From the IMG/VR virus record IMGVR_UViG_3300019776_000324, positions 248,001-312,000 of that record: 64,000 nt of DNA; one strand, given 5' to 3'. The translations under genes and the position numbers were made by a program. Shown here one piece after another: positions 53,294 through 64,000 of the stretch. The stretch's first letter is position 1. The number at the start of each line of letters is the position of its first letter. Under the pieces are notes generated by a model, which saw only the letters and a program-made list of their open reading frames with translations, did no database searches and had not been told where the DNA came from.

Positions 53294-54091
53294 TTGACAA
53301 CATTTACATCAGAAGATCGAAACAACGCTACTAAACTAGTAGATGAAGCACCGTTCCATCCTGGATACGAAGATGCCGCAGTAAATCCTAACGAAAGCGG
53401 TCGTCCACTTAGCGTGGTAATTCGCGAACAAATGAAGCTTAGAGGCAAACGCTTTTGGGCAGGTGATAATGTATCTGAATACATTACACAAGAATCAGAC
53501 AAAGAAATGCTTATCAACGAAGCTACACAGGCTTTTGAAAAGGTATTAGACACCTTGTTGATTGATCGTGAAAATGATCCTAACAGTAAGGGCACAGCTC
53601 GTCGTTTGGCTAAGATGTATTATAATGAAATTATGGCAGGTAGATATGAGAAGGCACCAGATGCTACTGCTTTTCCAAATGATAGTGAGGATAGATATGA
53701 AGGTATGTTGGTTGTACGCAGTGAATTGCGTTCTATGTGTAGTCATCATCATCAGCCAGTTAGCGGGGTGGCCTATATTGGCATCATCGCAGCAAACAAA
53801 CTCATTGGTCTTAGCAAGTATACTCGCATTGCTCAATGGTGTGCTCGCCGTGGCACTTTACAAGAAGAGTTATGTAACGACATCGCAAGAGAAATAATGA
53901 AGGCTACAGATTCACAGAATGTTGGCGTGTATATTCAAGCAACACATGGTTGCTGTGAGAATCGCGGCATTATGGCACACAGTAGTTTAACACAAACTAC
54001 AGTACTTAAAGGTGTGTTCAACACAGATCCAGCAACTAAGAAAGAGTTTATGGACAATATTAAATTACAACAGGAGTTTGCCCCAAGATGA
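53294..54091 (+). CDS. folE: GTP cyclohydrolase I
   Basis: T..RLAKMY, SMCSHHHQP, IGLSK..RI, R..LQE, A.H.C...RG, EF; TTG start. Confidence 0.95.
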   Translation: MTTFTSEDRNNATKLVDEAPFHPGYEDAAVNPNESGRPLSVVIREQMKLRGKRFWAGDNVSEYITQESDKEMLINEATQAFEKVLDTLLIDRENDPNSKGTARRLAKMYYNEIMAGRYEKAPDATAFPNDSEDRYEGMLVVRSELRSMCSHHHQPVSGVAYIGIIAANKLIGLSKYTRIAQWCARRGTLQEELCNDIAREIMKATDSQNVGVYIQATHGCCENRGIMAHSSLTQTTVLKGVFNTDPATKKEFMDNIKLQQEFAPR

Positions 54092-54828: not shown

Positions 54829-54859
54829 ACTAGTATTGTTAATTAATCTAGGTTATACG

Positions 54860-57274
54860 ATGAAGCGGATTTTGCTTTTAGCAACAGTAGTTCTACAACT
54901 AGCGGCCTGTGCTGGTGGAGGTGGTGGAGGTGGCGCAAATAATCCTGGCGGTAGTGCTCCACCAACCCCAAGCAGTGGGCCAACTTATCTTCGATCAGAA
55001 GTACCCTTTTCAACTCCGACCAAGGTAGCTACAGTTGATCCATTGGTAGCTATTACAACTTCAGCCGCAGTGGTTGATACCTTTACTGCAAATATTTCTG
55101 GGTCAGGCGAAGATGTTATTATTGCCGGCCGTCAAACTCAACCAACTAGTATTGCCAATTGGAGCAATAGTAAAATTAGTATGCTAAGTTGGTCAAATGG
55201 TACATTGGTTGATCGAACAGCGCAATGGTTCACAGGAGACTCTAATGTAATACTAGGAGCAGATCCTAATATTAAATTTGCTGACTTCTTTAAGAGCGGG
55301 CGCACTGATATGTTTGTGGCACCTAGTACCGATGCACAAAATTATGGTCCAGCATACCTTTATCAAAATACAGGAACTACATTCAATCGCATTACAATTC
55401 CGTTGTCCAATGTATGGGGACACGATACTGCTGTAGCTGATTTAAATGGCGATGGATATAAGGATTTTGTAATTACCGACTATGGTCCTAATATGACTGT
55501 CGGTATCAATAACCGAGTTAACGGTTTTAAAACTTATACCTCTGCGTTTGGGCCTGGGCCTAGTGCCGCATCAGTTGCAGTTGCAGATTTTATGGGCAAC
55601 GGAACTACCACTATGGTATTAACTGATACCGACACTAATATTGCTAACAGCACAAAATTATACAAGTGGGCTATTGACGGCGCAGATCAATTAAAGTTTG
55701 ACATGGTCAGTGTATTGCCTGCTCCTAGGCCTGGTATTAATCATAATATTAGAAGTTTGGTGTATGACTTTGATTCAAGTGGCGCCAACAGCTTGTTAAT
55801 CTTTGGAACCAACACCGCAACAAAATATTCTGACATACAATTTTTAAAAAATAACGGAAGCGGAGCATTTACAGATGTTACAGATACTACTCTAGTAGGG
55901 TATAATCACAACACATACAGTAGCTACAATCCAAAAATTGTTGATGTCAATGGAGATGGATTAACTGACATTTTAGTTAGTGGACAGGACTTTTCTGGTA
56001 ATAACAACAGCACTCAAGTCTTGTTGCGTAGTCGAGATAACAAATATGTGGCGGCCTATCAAAATTTATTAACTGATTTTGCCACACAATCAAATCAAAT
56101 ACAAGGAACAGACAATTCCTCCAACACCGTAAATGTTGTAAAGGGGCCTAACGGAAAAATGTATCTGGTTACTGCTACTAGTTTTATGAATGGTGCAGAC
56201 CGTCAACTAGCAGTATATCTTAGTAATATCAGTGACTCAACTAGTGTAGTGACTCCAAAGTTGGCCTTGGACTTGATTAAATCCAAATGGCCATACATGA
56301 CTGATATTCAAGCCAACACTGCACTGGCCATGACTTCGTCTACATACATGACTAATGCAGGCACTGGGCTAGTAATCAATCCAGATTCATTGCTACAACC
56401 AATTGGGTCGTTGTCCTTGATGACACAAAATGGATTAACACCGATCAAAGGATATATTGCAGGTGCAGACATTGGTGACGGTAATACACTAGTGCTAGAT
56501 AGCATAGGGCGTGGGTTTACTACTAGTCTTAAAGCAATGAATGTATCTGGATTAAACAGTTTTGGTTATAACACCGAGCATGTTGACCAACACAACTTAA
56601 CTAGTCATGCAGAATATCTAGTCAACGGTAGTCCAATGACCTATGGTAACATGCGTATTGCTACTGAAAATCGTAATGCCTTGTTTGGTAACGATCAAGG
56701 TCCGGGTATGTTGCAGAAACCCACACAATATTCCATAGGTATTCCCGAAGCATACAGAAATGGTAAGTTTAGTTATGGTATGCAGTACACCAACTTGAAC
56801 ACCAATCCGTGGATAGCATTTGGTGGAGCATGGGGTAGCATTACTAATTCTGGTATTATGGATAATGTGGCCACTTACAAAGATGGTGGATTTAGTGCCC
56901 AGGCCAGCATGATGCATGTTACCACTAATGTTACTCCTGGATTGATTACTAAAGTTAATAATATAGTTGGTGGCTGGGCCGAAAGTGGTTATCGTTATAC
57001 TGAAGATCAGTTTGGTGATATTGGAGTTTATGCTGGTGTTAAGCCCGTGGTACTGTCAGGCAATGTTGAAGCAAGAATGCCAACTAGTGTTGACAGCGCA
57101 GGCAATATAGTGTACACTAACAAGAAATTAGCGATACAAAATCAAGTCACCCCTTATGTTAGAGCACTATATACTAACATGATCGATAAGAAGACCATGT
57201 ATCGTTTTAGTGTAATGGGTACACAGCAAGGTCAATATCGACTCATGCACGAACTTAGATTTTGGATAGATTAA
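54860..57274 (+). CDS. Large lipoprotein with FG-GAP/VCBS repeats and C-terminal beta-barrel-like domain
   Basis: MKRILLLATVVLQLAAC lipobox plus poly-Gly tether; ADLNGDGYKD, VDVNGDGLTD, F.D.T repeats; amphipathic beta strands ending LRFWID. Confidence 0.7.
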   Translation: MKRILLLATVVLQLAACAGGGGGGGANNPGGSAPPTPSSGPTYLRSEVPFSTPTKVATVDPLVAITTSAAVVDTFTANISGSGEDVIIAGRQTQPTSIANWSNSKISMLSWSNGTLVDRTAQWFTGDSNVILGADPNIKFADFFKSGRTDMFVAPSTDAQNYGPAYLYQNTGTTFNRITIPLSNVWGHDTAVADLNGDGYKDFVITDYGPNMTVGINNRVNGFKTYTSAFGPGPSAASVAVADFMGNGTTTMVLTDTDTNIANSTKLYKWAIDGADQLKFDMVSVLPAPRPGINHNIRSLVYDFDSSGANSLLIFGTNTATKYSDIQFLKNNGSGAFTDVTDTTLVGYNHNTYSSYNPKIVDVNGDGLTDILVSGQDFSGNNNSTQVLLRSRDNKYVAAYQNLLTDFATQSNQIQGTDNSSNTVNVVKGPNGKMYLVTATSFMNGADRQLAVYLSNISDSTSVVTPKLALDLIKSKWPYMTDIQANTALAMTSSTYMTNAGTGLVINPDSLLQPIGSLSLMTQNGLTPIKGYIAGADIGDGNTLVLDSIGRGFTTSLKAMNVSGLNSFGYNTEHVDQHNLTSHAEYLVNGSPMTYGNMRIATENRNALFGNDQGPGMLQKPTQYSIGIPEAYRNGKFSYGMQYTNLNTNPWIAFGGAWGSITNSGIMDNVATYKDGGFSAQASMMHVTTNVTPGLITKVNNIVGGWAESGYRYTEDQFGDIGVYAGVKPVVLSGNVEARMPTSVDSAGNIVYTNKKLAIQNQVTPYVRALYTNMIDKKTMYRFSVMGTQQGQYRLMHELRFWID

Positions 57275-57275
57275 A

Positions 57276-57458
57276 ATGTTAGCACTTACCGCACTGATGT
57301 GTGCCTTGTTAGGATACCAGGTAACTATGCCTGCTGTAGACAATGCCAAGTACACCTTTACTGTTCACAAAGAACAAATTGTTCGCATGAATACTCAAAA
57401 TGGTTCATTTGAAGTGTGCGATGAGCATCTGAAGTGTACACCAGTTGAGAATAAATAG
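57276..57458 (+). CDS. Small exported hypothetical protein
   Basis: Hydrophobic N-terminus; VRMNT..G..E.C. Confidence 0.55.
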   Translation: MLALTALMCALLGYQVTMPAVDNAKYTFTVHKEQIVRMNTQNGSFEVCDEHLKCTPVENK

Positions 57459-57464
57459 TAGTCC

Positions 57465-57530
57465 AGCGGCCTTTCGGCGTCATCCCGCTTTACAAATTCT
57501 GCCGCCTATGCTATAATCTAACATAGGAGA
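57465..57530 (+). promoter_or_regulatory. Candidate riboswitch-like pseudoknot plus RBS-sequestering hairpin upstream of the queD operon, overlapping a TTTACA-17-TATAAT promoter
   Basis: AGCGG/CCGCT stem, loop CGGCG pairs TGCCG, A-rich linker TTACAAA; CCTATG/CATAGG covers AGGAGA. Confidence 0.5.
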
Positions 57531-57536
57531 ATAATC

Positions 57537-57674
57537 ATGGCAAAACAAATTTATGTATTTCATATCTTACACGAAGGTAAGAATCGTATCGAATTCCTTA
57601 GAGCCGAAACCGAAGACCAAGCTCGTGCTCAATTACCAGACGGTTGTACAGTAAACAAGGTTGAGGTGAAATAA
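57537..57674 (+). CDS. Small hypothetical protein, 45 aa, not in ORF track
   Basis: AGGAGA RBS; MAKQIYVFHILHEG...; stop abuts queD ATG. Confidence 0.65.
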   Translation: MAKQIYVFHILHEGKNRIEFLRAETEDQARAQLPDGCTVNKVEVK

Positions 57675-58181
57675 ATGAACTACACCGGATCAAGACCTTA
57701 CAAATATACAAGTACTAAAGAATATCACGATGCATTTCCTTGCGCTTATCGTCAATGGAGAGCAGATAGTCACTGCAACTTGATTCATGGCTACTCATTT
57801 AGCATGAAGTTTTACTTTGGCACAGACGACTTAGATGTGCGTAACTGGGCTGCTGACTACGGCGGACTCAAAGAACTCAAAGGTATCCTTGAAAGTCAAT
57901 TTGATCATACCTTACTAGTAGCAGAAGATGATCCTGAACTAGAAACATACAAGTTATTACAAGAAAAGAATCTTGCTAAACTAACTATACTACCTAAGCT
58001 AGGTTGCGAAGGTCTAGCAGATCAATTGTACAAGTTTGTAAATGGTGTTTATATTCCAGACATGTGGGGTCAATCAGAAGCAGATCGCTTGTGGTGCTAT
58101 CGTGTGGAAGTTCGCGAAACAATGTCTAACATGGCATATCGCGAAGGACATCGTGAATGGAATGAAGATCTCTTCGAATAA
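57675..58181 (+). CDS. queD: 6-carboxy-5,6,7,8-tetrahydropterin synthase
   Basis: HCNLIHGY (CxxxHG), D.G.LK.LK, FDH.LL, GCE.LA, VEVRET. Confidence 0.88.
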   Translation: MNYTGSRPYKYTSTKEYHDAFPCAYRQWRADSHCNLIHGYSFSMKFYFGTDDLDVRNWAADYGGLKELKGILESQFDHTLLVAEDDPELETYKLLQEKNLAKLTILPKLGCEGLADQLYKFVNGVYIPDMWGQSEADRLWCYRVEVRETMSNMAYREGHREWNEDLFE

Positions 58182-58443
58182 AGTTAACGAAATCCTTGAC
58201 ATACTTCAGGAGGAGTGTGGAGAGGTTATTGTTGCTATCAGCAAGTGTCGTCGCTTTGGTATGGATAACTCCTACAAAGACGGCGGCACACAACGCGAAC
58301 ATTTAATCCAAGAACTTGGCGATGTTACCTTGTTGATCGAATTACTTCACGCACATCAAGTTTTTACTGAACAAGAATTACATCAAGCACAAGTAAGAAA
58401 AAGTCAAAAGTTAGTCAAGTGGTCAAAAATCTATGAAGAATAG
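58162..58443 (+). CDS. MazG-like NTP pyrophosphohydrolase
   Basis: LQEECGEVI.A.SK..RFG ... L..ELGDV. Confidence 0.8.
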   Translation: MKISSNKVNEILDILQEECGEVIVAISKCRRFGMDNSYKDGGTQREHLIQELGDVTLLIELLHAHQVFTEQELHQAQVRKSQKLVKWSKIYEE

Positions 58444-62365: not shown

Positions 62366-62902
62366 ATGAAAAAAGTATATTACACTTGGCAGGATGTTGA
62401 AAATCAAACACAAGAAATTCTGCGTCAACTACAGCGTGATGCATGGATGCCCGATTATGTTGTAGGGCTTACTAGAGGCGGACTTGTTCCAGCTAATCTT
62501 ATTAGCCAATACTTAGAAGTGCCAATGGAAACACTCAAAGTAAGCCTGCGTGACGATGCTAGCCAACCCGAATCAAACTTATGGATGGCCGAAGATGCAT
62601 ACGGTCATGTAGATTATGATCCAATGTCAGGTGGTGATGGGCGTCAAAAGATTCTTATTGTAGACGACATCAATGATTCGGGTGCTACACTTAATTGGAT
62701 TAAACAAGACTGGATGAGTAGTTGTATGCCTGGCGATCTAGAACGCTGGAATCATGTATGGAACGATAATGTTCGTGTTGCTGTACTAGTTGATAACGAA
62801 GCCAGCGCCAGTGAATTAAATGTTAGATATTCAGCCATTGACCTAAATAAAGCTGAAGAAGATTGTTGGATTGTGTTTCCTTGGGAAGATTGGTGGAAGT
62901 GA
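62366..62902 (+). CDS. Purine phosphoribosyltransferase (Gpt-like)
   Basis: VVGLTRGGLVPA, LIVDDINDSGAT PRPP loop, WIVFPWE. Confidence 0.9.
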   Translation: MKKVYYTWQDVENQTQEILRQLQRDAWMPDYVVGLTRGGLVPANLISQYLEVPMETLKVSLRDDASQPESNLWMAEDAYGHVDYDPMSGGDGRQKILIVDDINDSGATLNWIKQDWMSSCMPGDLERWNHVWNDNVRVAVLVDNEASASELNVRYSAIDLNKAEEDCWIVFPWEDWWK

Positions 62903-63587: not shown

Positions 63588-63794
63588 ATGAACATATACT
63601 ATAGAGAATCAACATTGTTAGAACAAATAAATGATGCTATTAGCGACTGCGCTACTAGTAAAAAGCACATTGACTATTTTGAATTAACCAGCGAAGAACT
63701 TGCTTCTAATTGGACCAGTTTTGATAGAACCACAAATAATGGTATCGATGTTAGATATTCCTATAAAGGTATTCCTATAAAGGTTAAAGAATGA
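63588..63794 (+). CDS. Hypothetical protein
   Basis: TAAATA 5 nt before ATG; ATGA overlap with queE. Confidence 0.6.
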
Positions 63795-64000
63795 AAATTA
63801 AAGTATCAGAATTATTTTATAGTTTACAAGGCGAAGGTCGCTTTGTTGGTGTGCCAAGTGTGTTCTTGCGTACATATGGATGTAACTTTAAGTGTGCAGG
63901 CTTTGGTTGCAAGCCAGGCGAAAAGTCAACAGGCGCAGATGAAGTTGCTAAAGAAGTCAGCAAGTATGATACATTCTTAAGTTTGCCATTGGTTGAAACT
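63791..64000 (+). CDS. queE: 7-carboxy-7-deazaguanine synthase QueE (radical SAM), truncated by window end
   Basis: [32 protein letters not shown]. Confidence 0.85.

What the first reader, a model, noticed from the sequence alone, without database searches (positions are those of the whole stretch)
57451..57539. preQ1-I-like H-type pseudoknot in front of the queD operon: possible phage riboswitch variant
Seen: 7 nt after a late TAAATA comes a 5-bp P1 (AGCGG 57465-69 / CCGCT 57485-89), a 15-nt loop, an A-rich tail TTACAAA, and TGCCG (57500-04) able to pair loop CGGCG. An alternative pairing GCGGC/GCCGC and an adjacent CCTATG/CATAGG hairpin over the RBS offer a switch. The layout resembles preQ1-I aptamers, which regulate que genes, but the loop differs from the consensus I recall, so the ligand might be another deazapurine. 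Caveat: the tail also reads as a sigma70 promoter (TTTACA-17-TATAAT).
Basis: partly seen in the sequence, partly recalled or inferred. Interest (0 to 1): 0.65.

Follow-up and report, generated by a model that had tools for sequence, protein, structure and literature searches.

The report
Phage pseudoknot riboswitch candidate before queD
A 42-nucleotide RNA pseudoknot is conserved in front of a QueD-like gene in hundreds of uncultivated phages; it looks like an undescribed riboswitch class, laid out like preQ1-I but not a member of it, and is predicted to switch translation on.

Summary
The element is real, and comparative evidence puts it far beyond chance. A covariance model finds the element in 72 of 80 loci fetched by the QueD protein alone.

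Covariation proves an H-type pseudoknot:
- P1 is 57465-69 with 57485-89.
- P2 is GGCG 57476-79 with CGCC 57503-06.

About 14 unpaired nucleotides are invariant. At least three different expression platforms follow the same aptamer. In each, the P2 3' strand overlaps the strand that sequesters the Shine-Dalgarno sequence or the start codon. A ligand that stabilises the pseudoknot should therefore turn translation ON, the opposite of preQ1-I.

Rfam 15 gives no match for three variants. GenBank phages and the searched literature give nothing. Promoter-like motifs lie upstream of P1 in relatives, so the internal TTTACA-17-TATAAT cannot explain the family, though it may be a second promoter. No ligand, transcript or binding data exist. 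These phages have FolE, QueD-like and QueE-like genes but no QueC or TGT, so preQ1 is not the obvious ligand.

The parts
57452..57457 (+). TAAATA, T4-late-like promoter motif 7 nt upstream of P1; it overlaps the stop codon of the upstream 60-aa ORF
   Evidence: TAA[AG]TA lies within 26 nt upstream of P1 in 73 of 85 type-A relatives, against 1.3% of random windows. In this genome ATAAATA occurs 39 times on the + strand and 7 times on the - strand, and 25 of the 39 lie within 120 nt upstream of an ORF start. No transcript data.
57465..57469 (+). P1 5' strand, AGCGG
   Evidence: Pairs with 57485-89. Pair 2 is seen as G-C, C-G and U-A. Pair 3 is seen as C-G, A-U and U-A. In a scan that left both W positions free, 120 of 120 hits were complementary. 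Four true elements carry one P1 mismatch.
57470..57475 (+). L1, CCTTTC; it starts with a conserved N-C-U, and its length varies from about 4 to 11 nt in relatives
   Evidence: In the protein-derived, pattern-free set, C is 100% and U is 98% conserved (columns 21-22).
57476..57479 (+). P2 5' strand, GGCG
   Evidence: Pairs with 57503-06. Supported by anchor-defined pairs and by a tool count on an unfitted MAFFT alignment.
57480..57484 (+). L2, TCATC: invariant UCA, then U/C/A, then an invariant unpaired C just 5' of the P1 3' strand
   Evidence: UCA and the last C are 100% conserved in 56 unique pattern-free sequences.
57485..57489 (+). P1 3' strand, CCGCT
   Evidence: See the P1 5' strand.
57490..57502 (+). 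L3 tail, TTACAAATTCTGC: an A-rich core followed by an invariant UCUGC
   Evidence: Three A positions are 98-100% conserved and UCUGC is 98-100% conserved in the pattern-free set.
57503..57506 (+). P2 3' strand, CGCC; its last two C also belong to the anti-SD strand of P3
   Evidence: Pair 1 shows all four Watson-Crick types. In subclass 2 all five P2 pairs have double changes; the covariation score is 0.518 against 0.143 for shuffles, reached by 0 of 500.
57505..57527 (+). P3, the SD-sequestering hairpin: CCTATG 57505-10 with CATAGG 57522-27, loop 57511-21
   Evidence: 99.5% of cells are paired in 108 type-A sequences, with one double change and several G-U pairs. In other platform types it is replaced by different helices that also pair the P2 3' strand with the SD or start codon.
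57525..57529 (+). Shine-Dalgarno AGGAG, 7 nt before the ATG at 57537
   Evidence: Read from the sequence. The unpaired probability of 57525-27 is 0.01-0.03 in the free ensemble and 0.39-0.71 when the P2 strands are blocked.
57537..57674 (+). 45-aa ORF directly controlled by the element in this phage; it has no Pfam or PHROG hit
   Evidence: It is absent from all relatives. Among 305 elements only the window and L139 have an ORF between the element and QueD.
57675..58181 (+). QueD-like / PTPS-family gene. Its ATG abuts the TAA of the 45-aa ORF, and it has its own GAGG 8 nt upstream
   Evidence: Pfam PF01242 at 6e-13; PHROG QueD-like at 1e-34; NCBIfam QueD 29 bits, below the cut-off.
57489..57517 (+). 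sigma-70-like TTTACA-17-TATAAT with TG, lying inside L3, P2 and the P3 loop; possibly a second promoter
   Evidence: The -35 is explained by L3 conservation. The -10-like TAnnnT is kept in most type-A loops but is absent in platform types B and O.

Best explanation
Window 57465-57506 encodes the aptamer of an undescribed riboswitch-like RNA. It sits in the 5' leader of a QueD-like gene; in this phage a 45-aa ORF lies in between. The RNA folds into an H-type pseudoknot. P1 is AGCGG/CCGCU. A conserved loop ends in an unpaired C. An A-rich tail ends in an invariant UCUGC. P2 joins the loop GGCG to CGCC just after the tail.

The P2 3' strand has a second possible partner. In this window its last two C, together with UAUG, pair with CAUAGG and bury the Shine-Dalgarno sequence. 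In other phages the same strand pairs with the start-codon region. The two pairings exclude each other. Without the pseudoknot the ribosome-binding site is closed; when the pseudoknot is held shut, most likely by a small molecule bound among the invariant nucleotides, the site opens and translation goes ON.

Shown: the pseudoknot, the invariant unpaired nucleotides, the exclusive link to QueD-like genes, the modular expression platforms, and the overlap of P2 with the RBS-blocking strand. Inferred: transcription from the upstream TAAATA, ligand binding, the ON direction, and translational coupling to QueD here. The ligand is unknown. A guanine-like or pterin-like intermediate of the FolE/QueD/QueE pathway is the best guess (H2NTP, CPH4, CDG, preQ0 or a 7-deazapurine).
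For: - In each, 116 of 120 hits lie directly before a QueD-like gene, whose identity to the window's ranges from 21% to 97%.
- Model R1 finds the element in 72 of 80 loci fetched by protein alone, and only once in the 344-kb genome.
- Aptamer identity stays at 0.81-0.85 whatever the QueD divergence, while the upstream 60 nt sit at 0.57.
- P1 covaries at two pairs, plus a third in one weak second copy. W:W was complementary in 120 of 120 hits when left free.
- P2 covaries. Set 1: pairs 1-3 are paired 0.88/0.77/0.85 against shuffle means 0.39/0.43/0.47. Set 2: an unfitted alignment is 97.6% paired against 77.3%, with covariation 0.518 against 0.143 (0 of 500) and slid controls <=0.122. Duplex energy with the own partner is -4.79 against -3.61+-0.14 for swapped partners.
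- About 14 single-stranded nucleotides are invariant in the pattern-free set.
- Three or more expression platforms follow one aptamer, and each pairs the P2 3' strand with the SD or start codon. Examples are AAGUCAUC/GAUGACUU, UGCCAUUG/CAAUGGCA and AUGUCU/AGACAU. Own-partner energy is -8.86 against -7.82+-0.13 swapped.
- Blocking P2 opens the SD in silico.
- Promoter-like motifs lie upstream of P1.
Against:
- An ON switch on a biosynthetic gene is unusual.
- Within type A the SD hairpin is nearly invariant, so it has little covariation of its own, and it shares only two nucleotides with P2.
- The single-sequence fold is no more stable than shuffles.
- A near-consensus sigma-70 promoter lies inside the element and could give transcripts that lack the aptamer.
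- Both pattern scans were ascertained on the conserved loops, and the sequences are related, so shuffle statistics overstate independence.
- A protein could be the effector instead of a metabolite.
Confidence: 0.6

Rival explanations
1. The pseudoknot is a protein-binding translational operator. A phage or host protein (for example QueD itself or a phage translational regulator) binds the conserved loops and shifts the same P2-versus-RBS equilibrium. Known pseudoknotted operators of this kind include the phage T4 gene 32 mRNA and ribosomal-protein leaders (from my own knowledge).
For: Everything that supports the structure and the mutually exclusive pairing fits this reading equally well. No ligand has been shown. 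Phages do use pseudoknot operators.
Against: The aptamer stays about 0.8 identical while QueD drifts to 21-40% identity, and the neighbouring genes differ between loci. A co-evolving protein partner would therefore have to be a conserved host factor. The compact pocket-like set of invariant unpaired nucleotides next to a helix junction, and the tie to a single metabolic enzyme family, are typical of metabolite sensors.
Confidence: 0.17
2. It is a divergent true preQ1-I riboswitch that binds preQ1 or preQ0 through the unpaired C before the P1 3' strand, as in types I-III.
For: The topology is the same: a 5-bp P1 topped by G-C, U/A/C then C before the P1 3' strand, an A-rich tail, and a link to a QueD-like gene.
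Against: Rfam gives no match for three variants, even at E<=10 on stretches of 85, 96 and 126 nt. L1 and L3 are much longer, and L3 ends in an invariant UCUGC. P2 carries the anti-SD rather than the SD, so the logic is reversed. The phages lack QueC, so they have no phage route to preQ0 or preQ1, and they lack TGT/DpdA.
Confidence: 0.12
3. It is a ligand-independent structure: a leader that sets a fixed translation level or mRNA stability, or that responds to temperature or to co-transcriptional folding kinetics only.
For: The two competing folds exist without any need for a ligand. The default nested fold closes the SD.
Against: About 14 invariant unpaired nucleotides across very divergent phages are not needed for a simple stability element or thermometer. 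A structure that always closes the RBS of a conserved enzyme gene would serve no purpose.
Confidence: 0.08
4. The conservation reflects DNA signals only: the sigma-70-like TTTACA-17-TATAAT promoter 57489-57517, perhaps with an operator, and no functional RNA structure.
For: The match is 11 of 12 with an extended -10 TG. The TAnnnT in the P3 loop is kept in most type-A relatives.
Against: Compensatory changes keep Watson-Crick and G-U pairing in P1 and P2. Platform types B and O have the same aptamer without any -10 there. Promoter-like motifs lie upstream of P1 instead. In one group the element starts 6-8 nt after an upstream stop codon, inside an operon.
Confidence: 0.03

Closest known systems
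preQ1-I riboswitch (Rfam RF00522; types I-III as reviewed in PMC11625349)
   Same: Small H-type pseudoknot with a 5-bp P1 topped by a G-C pair. An unpaired C directly 5' of the P1 3' strand is preceded by U (as in type I) or A (as in type II/III). An A-rich tail follows P1. P2 forms between the loop and the sequence after the tail. Regulation is translational, and the element sits next to a 7-deazaguanine pathway gene.
   Different: No covariance-model match. The aptamer is about 42 nt rather than about 34. L1 is 4-11 nt and starts N-C-U rather than being a 2-3 nt loop with UU. L3 is 13 nt and ends in an invariant UCUGC. The P2 3' strand is the anti-SD or anti-start strand rather than the SD, so the predicted logic is ON rather than OFF. 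It is found only in uncultivated phage contigs and two MAG contigs. The phages lack QueC and TGT.
Guanidine-III (ykkC-III) riboswitch
   Same: A classic H-type pseudoknot of about 40 nt (PMC5696562) that regulates translation. From my own knowledge, ligand binding is thought to free the ribosome-binding site, making it an ON switch.
   Different: The conserved nucleotides are unrelated, there is no Rfam match, and the gene context differs (guanidine carboxylases and exporters).
SAM-II / SAM-V riboswitches
   Same: H-type pseudoknots that control translation through the SD (PMC3303485). From my own knowledge, SAM-V occurs in marine bacteria and phage-rich metagenomes.
   Different: They are OFF switches in which the SD lies in the pseudoknot helix. 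The sequences are unrelated and there is no Rfam match.
Phage T4 gene 32 mRNA leader pseudoknot (from my own knowledge)
   Same: A phage 5'-leader H-type pseudoknot that takes part in translational control.
   Different: It nucleates binding of the gene's own protein, has no invariant pocket-like loops and has no metabolic link.

Membership tests
preQ1-I riboswitch (RF00522) | Match to the Rfam covariance model | tested here: not met
   No hit at gathering score on the window. No PreQ1 hit at E<=10 on 501 nt or on 85 nt. Two divergent relatives gave only noise hits to miRNA and snoRNA models.
preQ1-I riboswitch (RF00522) | H-type pseudoknot: a 5-bp P1 and a short P2 between the loop and the 3' tail | tested here: met
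   P1 and P2 are supported by covariation.
preQ1-I riboswitch (RF00522) | P1 3' strand preceded by UC (type I) or AC (types II, III), where C is the specificity base (PMC11625349) | tested here: met
   In 56 unique pattern-free sequences the C is 100% conserved; the base before it is U in 88%, otherwise C or A. Its role in ligand recognition is untested.
preQ1-I riboswitch (RF00522) | A-rich L3 right after P1 that docks in the P1 minor groove | tested here: inconclusive
   L3 has an A-rich core with three A at 98-100%, but it is 13 nt long and ends in an invariant UCUGC. Docking cannot be tested here.
preQ1-I riboswitch (RF00522) | Very small aptamer with a short L1 (UU atop the P1 5' strand in types I and III) | tested here: not met
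   L1 is 6 nt here and about 4-11 nt in relatives, and it starts N-C-U.
preQ1-I riboswitch (RF00522) | In translational members the SD lies in the P2 3' strand, so the ligand turns expression OFF | tested here: not met
   The P2 3' strand is complementary to the SD or start codon, not part of it.
preQ1-I riboswitch (RF00522) | Binds preQ1 or preQ0 | not testable with these tools
   Needs in-line probing or ITC.
preQ1-I riboswitch (RF00522) | Controls queuosine/preQ1 synthesis or transport genes | tested here: inconclusive
   The element always sits before a QueD-like/PTPS gene, with FolE and a QueE-like gene nearby. There is no real QueC and no TGT in this genome or in five large relatives.
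Riboswitch (generic) | Conserved aptamer with covarying helices and invariant unpaired nucleotides, joined to varying expression platforms | tested here: met
Riboswitch (generic) | Transcribed as part of the 5' leader of the controlled gene | tested here: inconclusive
   Promoter-like motifs lie upstream of P1, and some copies are intercistronic.
Riboswitch (generic) | Direct, selective binding of a small molecule that changes the fold | not testable with these tools
sigma-70 promoter | -35 and -10 hexamers at 16-18 nt spacing | tested here: met
   TTTACA-17-TATAAT, 11 of 12, with TG.
sigma-70 promoter | Both hexamers conserved in relatives as the reason for the conservation | tested here: not met
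   The -35 coincides with L3, which is kept in all platform types. The -10 is missing in types B and O. Paired positions change in a compensatory way.
T4-type late promoter | TATAAATA-like box a few nucleotides upstream of the transcript start | tested here: inconclusive
   TAA[AG]TA lies 5-11 nt before P1 in most type-A relatives, and the motif is strand-biased and close to gene starts in this genome. A gp55-like sigma factor and the start site were not tested.

The most novel reading that the evidence does not exclude
This is a new riboswitch class, confined to uncultivated and often jumbo phages. It senses a metabolite of the GTP-to-7-deazapurine/pterin branch other than preQ1 (for example CDG, CPH4, dihydroneopterin triphosphate or a 7-deazapurine base). 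It turns translation of the committed enzyme ON by pulling the anti-SD or anti-start strand into a pseudoknot.
Probability: 0.4. Interest if true: 0.9.

Novelty: new variant of a known kind. Interest (0 to 1): 0.82.

Why it matters
Riboswitches are rare in phages, and those known are borrowed bacterial classes. This would be a class found almost only in phages: hundreds of copies in IMG/VR, none in 50,697 GenBank phage records, and only two MAG contigs among about 185,000 species genomes. It guards the entry step of a 7-deazapurine/pterin pathway that in other phages makes DNA modifications against restriction. Three things would follow if it holds:
- It gives a handle on when and why these phages make such bases.
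- It offers a natural example of the preQ1-I-like fold rewired for ON logic, and perhaps for another ligand.
- It provides a very small (about 42 nt) ON-switch part for engineering.
The ligand could also reveal the still unknown product of the FolE / QueD-like / QueE-like / PRTase cluster, which lacks QueC and DpdA.

Tried and rejected
- Rfam: no hit at gathering score on the whole window and none at E<=10 on three stretches; only noise for two relatives.
- Single-sequence folding: z = -0.22, uninformative.
- An outer helix UGCC(G)/(U)GGCA between 57500-04 and 57538-42, which appears in the MFE: only 70% paired, with no covariation in type A. It was not kept as a part. The equivalent anti-start helix is supported in the other platform types.
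- Megablast and blastn against GenBank phages: nothing.
- Cultured phages with the closest QueD (ACP17, vB_DshS-R5C, X1): QueD overlaps or abuts the upstream gene, there is no leader, and the model gives no hit.
- Second copy in the genome: only an E = 0.5 noise hit.
- QueC: the apparent hit is a NadE-like PP-loop enzyme.
I did not try to get it another way.
- Literature: five full-text searches found no description of such a motif. The one phage riboswitch paper found concerns a glutamine riboswitch.
- Host inference from the two MAG bins (Haliscomenobacter, Chitinophagales): not trusted. The elements use strong SD sequences and sigma-70-like promoters, and the contigs may be phage DNA in bins.

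Full report
**What is there.** The window is bases 248001-312000 of a 344,244-bp IMG/VR phage record with direct terminal repeats. The sigma-70-like TTTACA-17-TATAAT (57489-57517) scores 11 of 12 with an extended -10 TG. On the single sequence nothing stands out. The MFE of 57451-57545 has a z-score of -0.22 against shuffles. Rfam 15 has no match at gathering score on the window, and none at E<=10 on 501 nt or 85 nt around the site.

**Gene context.**
- The ATG at 57537 opens a 45-aa ORF with no family match. Its TAA abuts the ATG of a QueD-like/PTPS gene at 57675-58181.
- Downstream lie MazG, a glycosyltransferase-like protein, a GDP-mannose-4,6-dehydratase-like protein, a C-methyltransferase and an XPRT-like phosphoribosyltransferase.
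- Just past the window end lie a QueE-like radical-SAM protein and a NadE-like enzyme. FolE is 3.4 kb upstream.
- There is no real QueC and no TGT/DpdA, either here or in five large related contigs. 'queD operon' is therefore only loosely right.

**Relatives.** The QueD protein fetched 80 IMG/VR loci with 83-97% identity, out of 592 confirmed relatives. About 60 of them keep window 57464-57548 at 80-94% nucleotide identity, immediately before QueD, while the sequence further upstream is unrelated.

Of those hits 116 are true elements, and nearly all are directly followed by a QueD-like gene, including QueD only 36-60% identical to the window's. Of its 120 hits, 116 precede a QueD-like gene at 21-94% identity.

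Covariance model R1 finds the element in 72 of the 80 protein-derived loci. It finds it once in this genome (77.9 bits) and not in the cultured phages with the closest QueD, where no leader exists. GenBank phages hold nothing similar. One genome per 185,579 species gave only two MAG contigs, both with QueD after the element. Aptamer identity to the window stays at 0.81-0.85 in every QueD identity band from 30% to 100%, while the 60 nt upstream sit at about 0.57. The pattern scans inflate the aptamer figure somewhat.

**Structure.**
- *P1 (57465-69 with 57485-89).* It covaries at pair 2 (G-C, C-G, U-A) and pair 3 (C-G, A-U, U-A), and RNAalifold predicts it independently. In the second scan both W positions were free, and 120 of 120 hits are complementary: 79 A-U and 41 U-A. 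Four true elements carry one P1 mismatch.
- *P2, set 1.* I paired the bases counted back from the invariant UCA with those counted forward from the invariant UCUGC. This uses no complementarity to build the alignment. Pairs 1-4 are paired in 88, 77, 85 and 75% of 114 unique sequences. Shuffle means are 39, 43, 47 and 70%, and pair 1 shows all four Watson-Crick types.
- *P2, set 2.* A plain MAFFT alignment of 92 distinct sequences gives 97.6% paired cells against 77.3% for shuffles. The covariation score is 0.518 against 0.143 (0 of 500), slid controls reach at most 0.122, and all five P2 pairs have double changes. Own-partner duplex energy beats swapped partners, -4.79 against -3.61+-0.14 kcal/mol.
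- *Register.* In window coordinates P2 is GGCG 57476-79 with CGCC 57503-06.
- *Invariant unpaired bases.* In the pattern-free set of 56 unique sequences, the invariant or nearly invariant unpaired bases are C and U at the start of L1, UCA and the last C of L2, three A in L3, and UCUGC at its end.

**Expression platform.** The same aptamer is followed by at least three platforms.
- *Type A, this window.* The last two C of the P2 3' strand, plus UAUG, pair with CAUAGG and cover the SD. This hairpin is 99.5% paired but almost invariant.
- *Type B and others.* The P2 3' strand plus the next three or four bases pairs with the start-codon region or with the bases just after the SD. Examples are AAGUCAUC with GAUGACUU, UGCCAUUG with CAAUGGCA and AUGUCU with AGACAU. 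In several cases the start region simply repeats the P2 5' strand. Own-partner energy is -8.86 against -7.82+-0.13 for swapped partners, and CAUC...GAUG alternates with CAUUG...CAAUG.
- *In this window.* The SD bases 57525-27 are unpaired with probability 0.01-0.03 in the free ensemble and 0.39-0.71 when the P2 strands are blocked.

P2 and RBS closure therefore exclude each other, and whatever stabilises the pseudoknot should open the RBS. That is ON logic, the reverse of preQ1-I, where the SD itself lies in P2.

**Transcription.** TAA[AG]TA lies within 26 nt upstream of P1 in 73 of 85 type-A elements against 1.3% of random windows, mostly 5-11 nt away. Type B elements have TTGACA-17-TATAAT-like pairs ending about 8-12 nt before P1. 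One large group starts 6-8 nt after an upstream stop codon. In this genome ATAAATA is strand-biased (39 against 7) and lies near gene starts. These data place the aptamer in the transcript.

The internal promoter-like site cannot explain the family. Its -35 is the conserved L3, and its -10 is absent in types B and O. However, the TGnTAnnnT in the type-A loop is well kept, so a second, aptamer-less transcript remains possible.

**Comparison with known families.** The layout matches preQ1-I as defined in PMC11625349. Both are H-type pseudoknots with a 5-bp P1 topped by G-C, U/A then C before the P1 3' strand, and an A-rich tail. Membership fails on four counts:
- the covariance model gives no match;
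- the aptamer and L1 are larger;
- L3 ends in the extra invariant UCUGC;
- the platform logic is reversed.
Full-text searches found no description of such a motif.

**Verdict.** The structured, conserved, QueD-specific pseudoknot with a mutually exclusive RBS-blocking helix is established by comparative evidence (about 0.9). That it is a metabolite-sensing ON riboswitch is the best explanation (about 0.6). A protein operator (0.17), a true preQ1 sensor (0.12), a ligand-free element (0.08) and DNA signals only (0.03) remain as rivals. In this particular phage the element directly controls the unique 45-aa ORF. QueD probably follows by coupling, since the stop and start codons abut and QueD has its own GAGG; this last step is inferred.

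Noticed in passing
window 53294-54091, 57675-58181, 58042-58443, 62366-62902, 63791-64000 and on to G000 312648; G000 312906-313658: FolE, a QueD-like gene, MazG, an XPRT-like phosphoribosyltransferase, a QueE-like radical-SAM gene and a NadE-like amidotransferase are clustered with sugar-nucleotide enzymes. There is no QueC and no TGT/DpdA in this genome or in five large relatives. This suggests a phosphoribosyltransferase route to a 7-deazapurine nucleotide, with logic like tubercidin or toyocamycin synthesis, rather than DpdA-type DNA transglycosylation.
   Followed up: partly
window 57537-57674: A 45-aa ORF with no homologue in about 320 related loci sits between the element and QueD. It keeps the first codons of the relatives' QueD (MAKQ here, MANQ there), and its TAA abuts the QueD ATG. 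Only one other locus (L139, a 113-aa ORF) has any ORF in that place.
   Followed up: partly
L037:2203-2254: A second, partial copy of the aptamer lies about 640 nt upstream of the full element, before an unrelated ORF. It has P1 UGCGG/CCGCA, P2 5' strand GACAU and L2 UCAUC, but no UCUGC tail. Model score 20 bits.
   Followed up: no
window 57509-57514 and the same place in all relatives: UGCUA between the P2 3' strand and the SD is kept in every platform type: UAUGCUAWAAU, CUUGCUAC, UUGCUA. Nothing explains this. In type A it doubles as an extended -10 (TGnTAWAAT).
   Followed up: no
window 57534-57542 and relatives: In nearly all type-A elements a GCA lies within -3 to +6 of the start codon, as AGCAUG, AUGCA or AUGGCA. 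It is complementary to the invariant UGC of the UCUGC tail. The corresponding helix shows no covariation in type A.
   Followed up: partly
whole genome G000: ATAAATA occurs 39 times on the + strand and 7 times on the - strand. Of the 39, 25 lie within 120 nt upstream of an ORF start of at least 100 aa. This fits a T4-late-like promoter class in this jumbo phage.
   Followed up: partly
L206 (NZ_JBBAKG010000001.1, Haliscomenobacter MAG) and L207 (CAZXGO010000106.1, Chitinophagales MAG): These are the only two hits among the species-representative genomes. L206 carries FolE, HIT, two radical-SAM proteins, a QueD-like gene, a GT2 and a methyltransferase around the element. They are probably phage contigs in MAG bins, so host assignment is unsafe.
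   Followed up: partly
window 54836-57274: An 812-aa protein with FG-GAP repeats lies just upstream; it is found in only 13 of about 200 related loci.
   Followed up: no
window 58042-58443 versus 57675-58181: The longest MazG frame overlaps the QueD 3' end by 140 nt. The real MazG start is probably later, since the Pfam match begins at residue 49.
   Followed up: no
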